NCBI GenBank assembly: GCA_965112735.1
Contig: OZ218962.1
Location: forward strand, 3,224,001 to 3,288,000
From: Phaeosaccion multiseriatum
Taxonomy: Eukaryota > Protista > Ochrophyta, other classes
Direction: 5' to 3'
Length of the DNA stretch: 64,000 bases
A program made the translations under genes and the position numbers. The notes beneath the pieces are model-generated. The model was not told the DNA's origin. It saw nothing but the letters and a program-made list of their open reading frames with translations, and made no database searches. Below, piece by piece: positions 6,143-64,000 of the stretch; the stretch's first letter is position 1, and each line of letters starts with the position of its first letter.

Positions 6143-8308
6143 CTACCAGTTCAAGTAGGCGGCAGCCCCTGCAGAGGGAAGAAGCGACCAAGACCACACA
6201 CGATGGATGGCAATGGAGAGAGAGGGGAGAGATTCATGGTTACGGTTACAACATGCCTTGAGTTGGCCCTCTGCGGTGCACAAGGTACACATGTTTAGAC
6301 ACGAAACCGAAGCTCCACATCACTTCGGCTCACCTTGCAGGAAAGGGTGTCCCACATAGGCCCCGAGCACGATGGCGGTGATGATGAGGTAGGGTCCCCT
6401 GGCGAACTCCTTCCAGTAGTCATCGGGCAGCGTCTGCCGCCCCTCCCACACCGCCTGGAACGGGACCACGCTCGTGCGCGCCTTGACCTGCGCAGGCAAA
6501 GGAGTGAGCGAAGCAGAGTGAGCGGAAATGATGCTTCGGCTTGTTGTCCTCACCCAATCAGATCCTGTCAGAAGCAAGATGGACCGCTTGCCCCGGCTAC
6601 CGCCCTGAATGCGTGACTGCCTGAATGCGTGACTGCCACACTGATTTACTGCCTGACTGCCTGAATGCGTGACTGCCTACCCATGTGCCTGAATGCGTGA
6701 CTGCCTGACTGCCTGACCGACCCATGTGCCTGATTGCCTGACTGGCCCATATGCCTGACTGACCAATGTGCCTGATTGCCTGACTGACCCATATGCCTGA
6801 CTGACCCATATGCCTGACCTGCTCGAAGGCCTCTCCGTACTTTGCTCCCAGGCGGCGGTCCCCGTGCGGAATGGAGAAGGCGTGGTGTGCCATGAGCAGC
6901 GCCGAGGTGAGCAGCGTGAAGGACGTGCCGATGTACAGAGAGTGCGCCAGGCACCACATGGCCTGCCCCACGAACTGGGGATGGCGGGTGATGCGCATAA
7001 TGCCTATGGCGATGGCAGTGGACAGGCGATGGCAGTGGACAGGGGGGGGGGGGGTTAGGTGTAAGTTTGTTTTCGAGGGCAGATTGGGGGTGGGGAGAAG
7101 CGGGGCACCAAGGACGAAGGAAGGAAGGAAAGAAGGAATGGAAACGCAAATGGTCCAGGCATACACGCCCCAGACGTTCGAATAAGGCGTTGCGTGACAC
7201 CCCCGGTTAACATTTCCAAACAGTACAGTACCTGTCTCCCACATGTGCAACTTGGGCTTGTCGACGGCGGCCACCTCCAGCAGGTTGAAGGTGGAGGGGT
7301 ACAGGAACAGGAAGCTCAGTGCGCTCAGGAAGAAGACGCCCTCGTGCACGCCGGGCACCAGCCGCACGTCCCACAGCTGCGTGCCGTCGTAGCGGTGGTT
7401 GATGAAGTACACCACCGGGGACAGCGCCAGGGGGAGGCTCACCTGCACCGGTTGGTCATATATACAGCAGTCAGTCAGTCGGAGGAATGCGTGTGTGTAA
7501 GGTATCGAGGGAGAATTCTGGGCCCTGTGTGGAGAGAGGGCGCAGAGGGCTTCCTGGGGGCGCCCTCAGCGCACGTCCTTCTCCCTTTCTCTTCGCGAGA
7601 CACCTTCTTCCTCCCACTCCCTCCCTCCCTCCCTCATCCACTCACCACCCCGAACAGGACCCTCCACGCCCTCGCCCCGATGATGTCCTCCCCCTTGGCC
7701 CTGAGGCCCGCAAGGCCGCTGTGTGCCACCGCGAAGATGCCCAACAGCAGAGTGATGGTCCCCTCGTGGCTGCCCCCCACCAAGCTTTCCAGCACGCGGA
7801 TGTAGTCGTCCCCGAAGCCGGTGTCCGGGTTGATCCACAGCACGTCCAGCGCCCCCAGCACGGTGATGAGCACGGCGAGGAAGCGCACCCACTGGATGCC
7901 GCGCTCCTGCTCCAGGCTGAACACGGCCGCGTCTTCTCCGATCAGCTCCTGCTCGTTGGCCGCCGACATGGACAGGCTGGTGCTGCTGCTGCTTCTACTG
8001 TGGTTATCACTGCTAAGACTGTTGATACTGCTACTGCTACCAGAGCCACCACTAGTACTACTCGCCACGCCATTGCTGCTGCTGCTCATGGAGTCCCAGA
8101 AAGCCTGCTGTTCCTGCTGCAGCGACGGAAGTGCCCCTCTCACGTGGCTGCCTCGTGTGCAGAGGACTCTATCGCTACCAGCTCCCTTGCCACTGACTCT
8201 GCCTCCTTTCATGCAACGGGCAGGGTGTACCGCGAAGCCATGGGTCTTCTCCGGCAGCAGCAGGAGACATGCCGCAGCCGCGCTTAACACCAAATAATGT
8301 CGCACCAT
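6143..8308 (-). CDS. Z-ISO: 15-cis-zeta-carotene isomerase (NnrU family), probably plastid-targeted
   Basis: Conserved blocks LIGEDAAVFSL, FAVAHSGLAGLR, VYFINHRYDG, FLYPSTFNLLEVAAVDKPKLHMWETG|IMRITRHPQ, GDRRL, RTSVVPF and C-terminal HPFLQG|AAAYLNW*. The N-terminus is signal-peptide-like and ends THG|FAV. Confidence 0.95.
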
Positions 8309-8452
8309 GCCGCTCACGCGATTATTGGCCCTCGCGTTGCCCCTTGGTTCTCCTTTGCATGAAGGAGCGGGAAAATATCGGGTGCCATCCCGGCGCGCTG
8401 TGACGATCGGTTTCAGGCAAAGAACGACAGACAGGGAAGAACAGAGCCCACA

Positions 8453-61400: not shown

Positions 61401-64000
61401 AGTCCCCCCTGCTCCCTTCCACATGTCTCCGATCTCCTGCAGCACCCCGCAGTAGGTGGAGCACTCGGCGAGGCAGTGGGGGGGGCCGTGGCGCAGCACC
61501 TTCAAGGTGGTGATGAGGGCCTTGAGGGCCACCACTGATGACTCCGCTAGGGGGCGGTACCGCAGCAGCTGAGGGGATGGCAGTGGAGTGATTTGAGTTT
61601 TAGACGCGGAGGCACTCGCGGTATTGGCGGTAGTGGGGAGTCCGAAGGGATGGCAGTGAATGGGTGGATGGGGACGCAGGTACTTGGGCTTGGCCTGCAC
61701 AGATCATGACATCATTACGTGACCTTACGTACAACGCACCTGGAAGTAAAGGGTCAGTGACAAGTCGCCCTCCCACAGCGCAGCGATTATCATGCGCAGG
61801 TACTTGGCCTTGGGCCCCCCCGGGGACCTGATGGCAGTGGATGCGGAGAGAGGATGGCAGTGGGTGGAGGCAATGAAATGAGTCCGTCCGTAGGGAGTGT
61901 CAAGTATCGAGAGAGTACAGCTCTCTACAGCAGGCCACACGCGCCCCTGTCTGCCGCGACAAGGCGACATGCTTGCACATGGCAGCAATTCAATTCAATT
62001 CAATTCCCTCCTTCTGCCCACCCGGCCGGCAGCGAAACGGTCCTTGTCCTTGCGGTGGCAAGCACTTAGTCCTTACTTATGGCCCAAGATGCCTCTGCCC
62101 TCCCTCGGGCCCTTCCTTGTGCCTCAGCGTCCTTCTCTCCGTGCTTAACTCACTCACTCACTCATTCACTCACTCACTCACTCACTCACTCACCTGCTTG
62201 TGGTCTTGAGCAGCCACAGCTTGTAGCGCTGCTCCCCCCCGAGGAGCTTGTACCACTTGGAGGCAAGCGTCTCCCCCATGCGGTTGCGCCACACCAGAGT
62301 GCCGCCCGCCCTGAGGCCATGAGGTGATGAGGCGAGTGTGTGGAGAAGACATGTGAGGTCAGGACACGCACAGACAGAGACAGACAGACAGACAGACAGG
62401 CAGACAGACAGACGGTACAGAGAGGCAGACAGACGGACAGACAGGCAGATAGACCGGCAGACAGACAGAGACAGGCAGACAGGCAGATTGACACACAGAC
62501 AGACGCCACAGAGAGGCAGACAGACAGACAGACAGCCAGACAAACAGACAGACAGATAGACCGGCAGACAGACAGATAGACAGACAGACAGACAGACAGA
62601 CCCGGCGCCCTGCATCCACCGCACCCACCTGGGCATGCTGTTGACGCCGCTCCTGCCGAGAGAGTCTCCGCTGCCCAGCGTCGGCACATCCCGCGTTGGC
62701 GTCAGCCCCCCCCCGCCGGGGTACTGTTGCTGCCCATATGACTCTCCGAGGGGGCTCGGCGCGCGCTCGCTGCCGGTGCGCACCGTCTGGAAGTCTACGG
62801 CCTGCCCCTGCCCATATGCCTGCTGCAGCTCCTTGGCCCCGTTGCCCCTCCCATCCCCGCCGCCTTTGGGGAAGTGAAAGGCCTTCTCCTCGTCCTTGTA
62901 CTCCTCCCCCTGTGGCCAGTGCTGCAGCGCCCCGCTCCTATGCATCTCCACGCAGCGGTGCCACACCTTACGTAACGGCACATGTAAACAGAGCATTGCT
63001 CAGGTATGTCTCTGCCGTTGCTCTCTCACAAACACACACACACATTCCTTGGCACGCTCGCAAGCACCACACGCACGCACTCACCTCGCTGCACGTGGGC
63101 CTCTCATCCGGGTTGGAGGTGAGGCACAGCTGCATGAGCTCGGCCACCCCCCGGGAGTATCCGCCCCCCTCGGGCACCTTGTCCTCCTTGCTGAAGCCCC
63201 CGAGGATGCCCTGCGCGCCCCCCCTGACGCTTCCGTGGCGGTCCTCGAAGGGCGTGCGGTGGAAGCAGAGCTCGAAGAGAAGCACTCCGAGGGCCCAAAT
63301 GTCCACCTTCTCGGACACTTTGAAGCCCTGGTACAGGTCCACCTGGAGAGCCATACGGGTAGGGCAAAACGCTTTTAGACAGGAAAACTGAAAATTGCAT
63401 CGCATTGACAACGGACGAGCGCTCGCCCCCCCGCCTGTGCCCGCCCATATGCCCGCCCATACGCGCCCACAGGTCCGCGGTAAGCACACACATGGCGCCC
63501 TCAACTCCCCTAATGCCATACGCCTCTAACCTGCTCCGGCGCCCTGTAGGCCGGTGTGGTGTGTCTCCGGATGTCCTCCTTGGCGGCCTCCACCTGTCCG
63601 GGCCGTGTCCAGTCCCCCAGACAGGCGTGCGTGGTGCTGCAGCTGCTGAAGTCGCAGAGCTTGACGGCCCCGTCGTGCGCAAGCAGCAAGTTGGACACCT
63701 TGAGGTCTCTGTGCGCGATGGGCGGGTCTTGGCTGTGCAGGTGCTGCAGGGCCGAGAGCGCCTCTCGGAAGATGCGCAGCACCTCTGCTTCCTTCAAGCC
63801 GCTGCCGCCGCCCTCTACTGAGCGGCGTAGCTTGGCGAGCACGCTGGAGGGGGTGCAGAGATGGATGGGGGAGGGGGAGAGATGGAAGGATAGCGAGACG
63901 AGAGAGAGAGAGAGAGAGAGGAAAACAGAGAGCGAGAAAGAGAGGGAGGCACAGAAAAGAGCGAGCACAGTCAAATCCAAATATCATGACAAAGAGCATG
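55472..64000 (-). CDS. Dual-kinase protein: NAK (AAK1/GAK-like) kinase - ANTH (Sla2/HIP1-like) - Pro-rich/coiled coil - SH3 - TKL kinase; 5' end outside the window
   Basis: 16 phase-consistent exons. NAK: PPIAHRDLKVSNLLL, KLCDFSS, TTPAYRAPEQ|VDLY, KVDIWALG. ANTH: LKTTS|RSPGGPKAKYLR, VALKALITTLKVLRHGP, LK|VQFHQHHPEY, VPSLP. SH3: AVVKFAYEQQGPEQLSLK|VGD..GWFP. TKL: LGAGAFALV, VAVKKL, HRDLKSLN, DFGLSR, GTYHWMAPE. Confidence 0.85.

What the first reader, a model, noticed from the sequence alone, without database searches (positions are those of the whole stretch)
7005..61865. Polarised intron motif pair GGATGGCAGT (after donors) / ACTGCCATCC (before acceptors)
Seen, read on each gene's sense strand. 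The G-form follows donors at ~32672-32820, 34412, 46823-46850, 47565-47620, 48515-48660 and 50680-50710. The reverse complement precedes acceptors at ~7010-7040, 39462-39505, 42400-42450, 43160, 45028-45070, 47357-47420, 47787-47830, 48747-48860, 50190, 60250, 60705, 61575-61660 and 61830-61863. This holds in genes on both strands, with one apparent exception (51212-51250). Introns 47346-47630 and ~50175-50722 carry both forms, and exons 46869-47345, 47631-47771 and 48665-48736 are flanked by both. Inference: a lineage-specific splicing code in which complementary motifs base-pair to bridge intron ends or bracket exons, analogous to the (AC)n/(GT)n intron bridges of teleost fish. The simpler alternative is a dispersed repeat filtered by 5' G-rich / 3' pyrimidine selection.
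Basis: partly seen in the sequence, partly recalled or inferred. Interest (0 to 1): 0.8.

Follow-up and report, generated by a model that had tools for sequence, protein, structure and literature searches.

The report
Ten-letter repeat capping intron ends
In this GC-rich alga related to brown seaweeds, about a quarter of the introns in the window carry near-exact copies of one 10-letter repeat next to their splice sites, in opposite orientation at the two ends; the pattern is real, but it looks like a repeat sorted by splicing rules, not a code that ties intron ends together.

Summary
GGATGGCAGT occurs 27 times exactly (0.29 expected) and 76 times with one mismatch or fewer (6.6 expected), mostly in short arrays of period 10. 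On my own intron models (67 introns), 20 of 22 intronic arrays lie within 50 nt of a splice site. The G-form sits 5-35 nt after six donors. The C-form sits 1-15 nt before thirteen acceptors. Orientation sorts cleanly (Fisher p = 1.8e-4).

The bridging interpretation is not supported here.
- Only 2 of 17 motif introns carry both forms (odds ratio 2.8, p = 0.28).
- An intron's own 5' end pairs with its C-form no better than a random intron's 5' end.
- Local base composition alone predicts about 15:1 or stronger orientation odds.

My best reading is a lineage-specific, genome-wide hyperabundant 10-bp DNA repeat that survives at intron ends only in the splicing-compatible orientation. The AG-free C-form lies between branch-like motifs and the 3' splice site. 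The G-form joins the G-rich stretch after donors.

Composition does not explain everything. Copies are near-exact with no decay series, they concentrate at intron ends, and they cluster in two genes. No RNA data exist. Other agents of this scan saw similar mirror-image motifs elsewhere in this genome.

The parts
32675..32804 (+). G-form array, 12 units, 35 nt after the donor of intron 32640-33066 (+ gene)
34412..34421 (+). Single G-form unit 13 nt after donor caa|GTAAGG of hand-called intron 34399-34493
46830..46849 (-). G-form x2 (variant GGATGGCAGC), 20 nt after the donor of intron 46661-46869
   Evidence: exon junction supported by homologs
47572..47621 (-). G-form units 9 nt after the donor of intron 47344-47630, which also carries the C-form
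48518..48659 (-). G-form x7 inside a 22-nt unit, GTAAGGGATGGCAGCAGAAGGG, that also holds a consensus donor; 5 nt after the donor of intron 48352-48664
50686..50705 (-). G-form x2, 17 nt after the donor of intron 50174-50722, which also carries the C-form
7010..7036 (-). C-form x2 on the sense strand, 6 nt before the acceptor of intron 7004-7231
39463..39500 (+). C-form x2, 13 nt before the acceptor of intron 39237-39513 (+ gene)
42398..42447 (-). C-form x4, 10 nt before the acceptor of intron 42388-42731
43159..43168 (-). Single C-form unit, 12 nt before the acceptor of intron 43147-43411
45028..45066 (-). C-form x2, 15 nt before the acceptor of intron 45013-45137
47357..47410 (-). C-form units, 13 nt before the acceptor of intron 47344-47630
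47788..47827 (-). C-form x4, 12 nt before the acceptor of curated intron 47776-48034
48747..48841 (-). C-form array (6 units, variants), 13 nt before the AAG acceptor of curated intron 48734-48883
50189..50198 (-). Single C-form unit, 15 nt before the acceptor of intron 50174-50722
60249..60258 (-). Single C-form unit, 4 nt before the acceptor of intron 60245-60374
60706..60715 (-). Single C-form unit, 12 nt before the acceptor of intron 60694-60856
61575..61657 (-). Two C-form units in intron 61569-61739, 6 nt and 79 nt before the acceptor
61829..61861 (-). C-form x2, ending 1 nt before the acceptor AG of intron 61828-62193
51239..51248 (-). The exception: a G-form 96 nt before the acceptor of intron 51143-52680. 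It lies upstream of the last internal AGs, so outside the AG-free zone.
47205..47214 (-). Exonic copy, C-form on the sense strand, coding TSTAIP in exon 46870-47343
23288..23317 (+). G-form x3 on the sense strand.
18916..18935 (+). G-form x2 on the + strand in a stretch I could not assign to an intron

Best explanation
GGATGGCAGT is the unit of a lineage-specific 10-bp DNA repeat. It is hyperabundant across this genome and sits mainly at the ends of introns. As double-stranded DNA it can land or expand in either orientation, but each splice-site neighbourhood keeps only one.

At the 3' end, copies lie between branch-point-like motifs and the acceptor. That stretch must hold no AG. The C-form (ACTGCCATCC) has neither AG nor GT, is 70% pyrimidine, and runs into the poly-C tract before the YAG. 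It therefore serves as, or extends, the pyrimidine tract. The G-form would add a CAG per unit and so create false acceptors.

At the 5' end, the G-form joins the general G-rich stretch of the first 40 nt or so after donors.

The complementarity of the two forms is then a by-product of one DNA repeat being used in two orientations.

Shown: abundance, position, polarity, the AG-free context, and the lack of co-occurrence. Inferred: that selection on splicing does the sorting, and that copies are kept at intron ends because they help splice-site recognition. Unknown: how the repeat spreads. Local clustering suggests short-range templated copying or slippage.
For: Abundance
- 27 exact copies against 0.29 expected. 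About 0.02 are expected per end zone from zone composition.
- Genomic contigs of four DNA runs pile up about 650-fold over single-copy depth on the array at 47788-47827.

Position
- 20 of 22 intronic arrays lie in end zones that make up 31% of intron bases (p = 1e-8).
- All 13 acceptor-side arrays end 1-15 nt before the 3' splice site (p = 4e-7).

Polarity
- 5' zone G:C = 6:1; 3' zone G:C = 0:13 (Fisher p = 1.8e-4).

General intron asymmetry, independent of the motif
- GC skew is +0.53 to +0.28 in the first 40 nt and -0.25 to -0.41 in the last 100 nt, unchanged after masking the motif.
- Motif-masked Markov models give about 15:1 odds for the G-form after donors and a G:C ratio that printed as 0.0 before acceptors.

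AG exclusion
- The C-form has 0 AG and 0 GT per unit; the G-form has one of each.
- C-form units lie inside the AG-free zone in 11 of 13 introns. Most have yTnAy motifs upstream.
- Motif introns have longer AG-free zones, median 88 against 58 nt (p = 0.011).
- GT/GC-rich repeats have no AG in either orientation. They show no polarity despite being G-rich.
- The one exception, at 51239, lies upstream of the AG-free zone.

Against pairing and transposon origin: see the rival explanations.
Against: A pure filter on neutral insertions should leave many mid-intron and intergenic copies. I found only 2 mid-intron arrays in 14.6 kb and 2 multi-unit arrays outside introns.

A generic pyrimidine-tract role would not preserve the exact word. 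Yet copies have 0-1 mismatches in 13 introns, and the 2-mismatch class is not enriched: 3 observed against 5.1 expected. Five acceptor-side copies are single units, which slippage in place cannot make.

The C-form has no AG or GT, so nothing obvious forbids it after donors, yet none of the six arrays there is a C-form.

No RNA data exist, so splice sites and any effect on splicing are inferred. The sample is one 64-kb window, mostly two genes.
Confidence: 0.45

Rival explanations
1. Intron-end bridging or exon bracketing. The G-form after a donor pairs with a C-form before an acceptor in the pre-mRNA. This brings splice sites together, as proposed for (GT)n/(AC)n in teleost introns.
For: The two forms are exact reverse complements.

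Introns 47344-47630 and 50174-50722 carry both. Their ends give the strongest own-end duplexes (-67 and -55 kcal/mol, against shuffled -46 and -45). The minimum-energy fold of 47344-47630 pairs its two ends over about 60 nt.

Intron 56544-56722 does the same with a different pair, GGAGA/TCTCC (z = -3.8).

Three consecutive exons are bracketed by C-form upstream and G-form downstream.
Against: - Only 2 of 17 motif introns have both forms (odds ratio 2.8, p = 0.28; within the ARM gene p = 0.47).
- Eleven of 13 introns with a 3' C-form have no partner. Their own 5' ends rank at 0.55 among all 5' ends, where 0.5 is random. Some are very poor partners, -5 to -17 kcal/mol against a median of -25.
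- Own-end duplexes overall are no better than cross-intron pairs (p = 0.086), shuffles, or random 60-mers of this window.
- The fold of 47344-47630 is not more stable than shuffles (z = -1.1).
- Same-intron mirrored 8-mer sharing is 10 of 62, against 11% between different introns.
- The bracketing cases are three neighbours in one gene (p = 0.066).
Confidence: 0.12
2. Relics or terminal repeats of an intron-generating mobile element (introner-like), or of a process that caps newly made introns. The motif would have arrived with the intron during a lineage-specific burst of intron gain.
For: - Copies are near-exact with no decay series, sit at near-fixed distances from both splice sites, and are mirror-symmetric like inverted terminal repeats.
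- The four motif introns I could compare (at 48352, 47776, 47344 and 46661) are not at intron positions of the brown algae Choristocarpus and Sphacelaria. The one motif-less intron compared (46238-46344) is shared.
- The orthologue has no introns in a metagenomic relative and almost none in Chrysophaeum.
- Other agents of this scan read similar mirrored motifs in this genome as introner ends (unchecked).
Against: - Motif introns share nothing beyond the arrays; the longest match is 57 nt or less.
- Junction direct repeats are no longer than the splice consensus gives (own 3.36 against cross 3.27 nt).
- Only 2 of 17 introns have the motif at both ends, and the 13:6 excess at acceptors is not expected of inverted terminal repeats.
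- The published introner definition needs similarity reaching both boundaries and filters out microsatellite-like families (PMC9860276).
- The intron-position sample is five introns (Fisher p = 0.2).
Confidence: 0.25
3. A sequence-specific recognition site. The word, not just its composition, would be bound near splice sites by a lineage-specific splicing factor or by a trans-acting RNA that pairs with it.
For: - Exact or single-mismatch copies, including single units, lie 1-15 nt before 13 acceptors with no 2-mismatch halo.
- A recurrent composite CTGCCATCC + C-run + YAG is seen.
- Recognition by base pairing with an RNA could explain why both orientations of one word are used.
Against: No candidate factor or RNA is known, and no Rfam family is found in the window. 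Two protein sites being exact reverse complements would be a coincidence. Use is patchy: none in the 14 introns of the 12-23 kb genes, which fits local spread better than a general code. Not testable with these tools.
Confidence: 0.1
4. A neutral minisatellite with no role. Polarity and position would be side effects of base composition and slippage-prone low-complexity intron ends.
For: Composition alone predicts the orientation odds. Intron ends in this window are full of other tandem repeats.
Against: The expected number of exact copies from composition is about 0.02 per zone, against 8 introns observed at the 3' end. The same complex 10-mer at about 20 independent sites cannot arise repeatedly by slippage. 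Acceptor-side distances of 15 nt or less are far from uniform within a C-rich zone of about 100 nt (p = 4e-7).
Confidence: 0.08

Closest known systems
Teleost intron-bridging repeats, (GT)n after donors and (AC)n before acceptors (from my own knowledge: Lin et al. 2016, Genome Research; paper not read here)
   Same: Complementary repeats with opposite polarity at the two intron ends. Two introns here (47344-47630 and 50174-50722) could fold the same way.
   Different: Most introns here carry only one form, and co-occurrence is at chance. The unit is a complex 10-mer, not a dinucleotide. GT/AC repeats in this window show no polarity.
Polypyrimidine tract with AG-dinucleotide exclusion zone between branch point and 3' splice site (established splicing knowledge; Gooding et al. 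2006, from memory)
   Same: The C-form is pyrimidine-rich and AG-free. It lies downstream of yTnAy motifs, abuts the C-run and YAG, and lengthens the AG-free zone.
   Different: An ordinary tract is defined by composition. Here one exact word recurs in 13 introns. The tract is C-rich, not U-rich.
Introner elements (Gozashti et al. 2022, PMC9860276)
   Same: Many introns share sequence close to the splice boundaries; the symmetry is mirror-like; the introns tested are lineage-specific; a related lineage is reported to have had a burst of intron gain.
   Different: There is no similarity across the intron, usually only one end is involved, no target-site duplication is seen, and the repeat is microsatellite-like, which that study filters out.
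G-run intronic splicing enhancers downstream of 5' splice sites in short GC-rich introns (from my own knowledge: McCullough and Berget 1997)
   Same: The G-form lies 5-35 nt after donors, inside a generally G-rich zone.
   Different: The unit has GG doublets, not GGG runs. No binding protein is known in this lineage.

Membership tests
Intron-bridging complementary repeats | Both complementary forms in the same intron, more often than chance | tested here: not met
   2 of 17 motif introns; table [[2,3],[11,46]], p = 0.28
Intron-bridging complementary repeats | Opposite polarity at donor and acceptor ends | tested here: met
   5' zone G:C = 6:1, 3' zone 0:13, Fisher p = 1.8e-4
Intron-bridging complementary repeats | An intron's own ends pair better than controls | tested here: not met
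   Own -30.5 against cross -28.8 kcal/mol (p = 0.086) and shuffled -29.3. Rank fraction 0.47 for introns with a C-form. Met only for 2-4 individual introns.
Intron-bridging complementary repeats | Splicing depends on the pairing | not testable with these tools
   No RNA runs for this organism
Introner elements | Family of introns with similarity reaching near both splice boundaries | tested here: not met
   All-against-all blastn: matches of 57 nt or less, arrays only, usually at one end; criterion from PMC9860276
Introner elements | Target-site duplications or terminal inverted repeats (present in some families only) | tested here: not met
   Junction repeats 3.36 against 3.27 nt in cross controls; inverted ends in 2 introns only
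Introner elements | Lineage-specific intron positions | tested here: inconclusive
   0 of 4 motif introns and 1 of 1 motif-less intron shared with Choristocarpus/Sphacelaria; n = 5
Pyrimidine tract within the AG-exclusion zone | Pyrimidine-rich and AG-free, between branch site and 3' splice site | tested here: met
   C-form has 0 AG and 7 of 10 pyrimidines; inside the AG-free zone in 11 of 13 introns; yTnAy upstream in most. Branch sites are predicted, not mapped.
Pyrimidine tract within the AG-exclusion zone | Bound by 3' splice-site factors and needed for splicing | not testable with these tools
   No RNA or protein-binding data
Minisatellite / tandem repeat | Head-to-tail copies of a short unit with variable copy number | tested here: met
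   Period 10, 1-12 units per site. Five acceptor-side sites hold a single unit.

The most novel reading that the evidence does not exclude
The motif marks an undescribed way of making or remodelling introns in this lineage. Short, exact, orientation-sorted caps would be added at intron ends, either by targeted templated copying or as the minimal ends of an intron-generating element, during a recent burst of intron gain. Alternatively, the word is read by base pairing with a trans-acting RNA. Either would explain the exact copies, the near-fixed distance to splice sites and the lineage-specific intron positions, which composition and a simple filter do not.
Probability: 0.2. Interest if true: 0.85.

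Novelty: new variant of a known kind. Interest (0 to 1): 0.5.

Why it matters
How introns are gained, and how short GC-rich introns are recognised, are open questions. Here one exact 10-letter word sits next to a quarter of the splice sites in two unrelated genes, with strict polarity. The lineage probably gained many introns recently.

If the word is only a repeat sorted by splicing rules, it is a clean natural experiment. It shows which sequence features are tolerated at each intron end: AG exclusion at the 3' end and G-richness at the 5' end.

If it arrives with new introns, or is read as a specific signal, it would be a new piece of intron biology. It could be tested directly with RNA-seq, sister-genome comparison and minigenes.

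Tried and rejected
- RNA evidence: the only public runs that hold this DNA are four DNA runs of one sample. They show no splice junctions. The listed 'joints' are cross-mapping of motif-bearing contigs from other loci.
- Annotation from databases: the window's own proteins are not in the protein collections, so no deposited gene model could be used. I built my own models instead.
- The first HMM settings over-called introns. I tightened them. The 47.6-49.4 kb region still needed hand curation. Exons were joined only inside local scripts to check reading frames.
- A search with a SelO-like exon found nothing at E <= 1e-30, probably because of the tool's length window. The planned control on motif-less introns was dropped.
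- A metagenome scan for a 20-mer of the array gave 19 loci. Eighteen have 44-55% or 70% GC and one (L016, 1.4 kb) has 61%; most hold one or two local arrays. I took them for other organisms; they gave no replication.
- Literature: a search for the 10-mer returned only primer lists. My guess that the organism was Emiliania was wrong; the closest homologues are from brown and yellow-green algae.
- Rfam found nothing in the window.
- Resemblance of the motif to the U1 or U2 snRNA pairing regions, and a two-quartet G-quadruplex in the G-form, were considered from memory only. Both were too weak to claim.

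
Full report
**What is there**

The window is 59-67% GC and dense in tandem repeats. GGATGGCAGT occurs 27 times exactly, against 0.29 in dinucleotide shuffles. With one mismatch or fewer it occurs 76 times against 6.6. 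Most copies form arrays of period 10 with 1-12 units. Variants include GGATGGCAGC and GGAAGGCAGT.

Four public runs of one sample hold the region. They are genomic contigs, collinear through introns. Their summed word depth over the array at 47788-47827 is about 650 times that of single-copy bins. Over a thousand contigs match parts of a 2.6-kb stretch. The repeat is therefore hyperabundant genome-wide. No RNA run exists.

**Organism**

The window's proteins are not in the protein collections. The closest homologues of an ARM-repeat exon come from the brown algae Sphacelaria (70%) and Choristocarpus (62%) and from the yellow-green alga Heterococcus (67%). This points to a GC-rich stramenopile of the brown-alga/yellow-green-alga group. 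It agrees with other agents' notes on this genome. I did not determine the species.

[quoted passage not shown] The introns here fit that description, but this is a lead, not an identification.

**Gene models**

With no annotation or RNA, I wrote a codon-usage and splice-site HMM. Its splice matrices cover only -3..+6 and -6..+1, so it cannot see the motif.

For the minus-strand ARM-repeat gene (55046-40878), collinear tblastn of homologues P0006, P0008 and P0009 supports the exon chain. I corrected 47.6-49.4 kb by enumerating frame-consistent splice sites and keeping the ARM repeat pattern. One short intron (34399-34493) was added by eye. The final set has 67 introns, median length about 240 nt. 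All splice sites are inferences.

- Of 22 intronic arrays, 20 lie within 50 nt of a splice site, although those zones are 31% of intron bases (p = 1e-8).
- After donors, G:C is 6:1. Before acceptors it is 0:13 (Fisher p = 1.8e-4).
- G-forms start 5, 9, 13, 17, 20 and 35 nt after the donor.
- C-forms end 1, 4, 6, 6, 10, 12, 12, 12, 13, 13, 13, 15 and 15 nt before the acceptor (p = 4e-7 against uniform over 50 nt).
- The acceptor side shows a recurrent composite: CTGCCATCC, then a C-run, then YAG.
- Seventeen of 67 introns carry the motif at an end.

**Is the polarity more than composition?**

It is not. Introns here are generally G-rich at the start and C-rich at the end. GC skew is +0.53 to +0.28 over the first 40 nt and -0.25 to -0.41 over the last 100 nt. 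Masking the motif leaves this unchanged. First-order Markov models from motif-masked zones give about 15:1 for the G-form after donors and a still stronger preference for the C-form before acceptors.

Abundance is another matter. Those models expect about 0.02 exact copies per zone.

**Is there bridging?**

Only two introns carry both forms (47344-47630 and 50174-50722). The co-occurrence table [[2,3],[11,46]] gives p = 0.28.
- For the 13 introns with a 3' C-form, the intron's own 5' end ranks at 0.47 among all 5' ends as a duplex partner. Without the two double-form introns it ranks at 0.55. Several are very poor partners.
- Across 54 introns, own-end duplexes average -30.5 kcal/mol. Cross pairs average -28.8 (p = 0.086), shuffles -29.3 and random 60-mers of the window -29.8.
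- Mirrored 8-mer sharing within an intron (10 of 62) matches the rate between introns, 11%.
- The fold of 47344-47630 does pair its ends, but it is no more stable than shuffles (z = -1.1).
- Intron 56544-56722 pairs its ends strongly through a different repeat pair, GGAGA/TCTCC (z = -3.8).
- Exon bracketing occurs three times, all adjacent in one gene (p = 0.066).

Bridging may operate in a few introns. It is not what the motif does in general.

**Is it an introner?**

- Motif introns share only the arrays; matches are 57 nt or less.
- Direct repeats across the two junctions are no longer than the splice consensus gives (3.36 against 3.27 nt).
- The published introner definition needs similarity reaching both boundaries and excludes microsatellite-like families (PMC9860276).

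On the other side, intron positions hint at recent gain. In the stretch covered by the Choristocarpus and Sphacelaria genes, the four motif introns are not at brown-algal positions. The one motif-less intron is. The orthologue is intronless or nearly so in two other stramenopiles. Five introns are too few to decide.

**What sorts the orientation**

The C-form array contains no AG and no GT. The G-form contains one CAG and one GT per unit.
- C-form units lie inside the AG-free stretch before the acceptor in 11 of 13 introns, usually downstream of yTnAy branch-like motifs.
- Motif introns have longer AG-free stretches (median 88 against 58 nt, p = 0.011).
- G-rich GT/GC repeats have no AG in either orientation. 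They occur before acceptors in the G-rich orientation and show no polarity.
- The single exception, the G-form at 51239, lies upstream of the last internal AGs.

The rule at the 3' end therefore looks like AG exclusion between branch point and acceptor, a known constraint, and not G/C content as such. After donors, the G-form simply matches the general G-richness. I have no mechanical reason why the harmless-looking C-form is absent there (6:0 to 6:1 is a small sample).

**What remains unexplained**

- Copies are exact or one mismatch off in 13 acceptor zones (0.8 expected). The two-mismatch class is not enriched (3 against 5.1). There is no decay series, so copies are young or kept precisely.
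- Five acceptor-side copies are single units.
- A filter on neutral insertions should leave many mid-intron and intergenic copies, and it does not.
- Motif introns cluster at 42.4-50.7 kb and 60.2-62.2 kb. There are none among the 14 introns of the genes at 12-23 kb.

These points favour either positive retention at splice sites, targeted or local templated copying, or arrival with young introns. I cannot separate these possibilities here.

**Verdict**

The pattern is real and striking. A residue points to recent, splice-site-linked spread.

Other agents of this scan reported mirror-image motifs at intron ends on other parts of this genome. The phenomenon is genome-wide and involves several words. 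I found no description of it in the papers searched.

Noticed in passing
window 48515-48664 (- strand): Seven tandem copies of a 22-nt unit, GTAAGGGATGGCAGCAGAAGGG. Each contains a consensus donor (G|GTAAGG) followed by the G-form. The period is not a multiple of 3, so use of a later donor would shift the reading frame.
   Followed up: partly
window 45465-45568, 46238-46344, 46661-46869 (- strand): A second polar pair. GTAAGTCAGT (donor-like) repeats after a donor, and its complement ACTGACTTAC (CTGAC/CTTAC, branch-like) repeats before two acceptors. In register it matches the G-form unit at 7 of 10 positions, which hints at a common origin.
   Followed up: partly
window 56544-56722 (- strand): This intron has (GGAGA)n at its 5' end and (TCTCC)n at its 3' end. 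The predicted end-to-end helix gives z = -3.8 against shuffles, the best case for bridging in the window, and it does not involve the 10-mer.
   Followed up: partly
It is another tandem repeat whose unit contains a donor.
   Followed up: no
window 48734 and 48352 (- strand): Two predicted acceptors are AAG, not CAG. The choice rests on reading frame and ARM-repeat continuity only.
   Followed up: partly
window 40878-55046 (- strand); L002, L004, L001: The ARM-repeat gene has about 22 exons here. It has no introns in a metagenomic relative (L002) and almost none in Chrysophaeum (L004). In the brown alga Choristocarpus (L001) its many introns sit mostly at other positions.
   Followed up: partly
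window 51270-52320 and 27678-28325: Very long simple repeats: about 1 kb of (GTCT)n on the sense strand inside intron 51143-52680, and 650 bp of (AC)n.
   Followed up: no
window 8453-10384 and 24149-25620 (+ strand): Two genes built of 114-bp repeats coding FNIP-type leucine-rich repeats (PF05725). The closest database relatives are only 34% identical.
   Followed up: no
window 33422-33457 and 39690-39705 (+ strand): TGTATCACCAAC(TGG) occurs here too, once as a tandem array and once about 20 nt before the acceptor of intron 39588-39723. Other agents reported this word at intron ends elsewhere in the genome.
   Followed up: no
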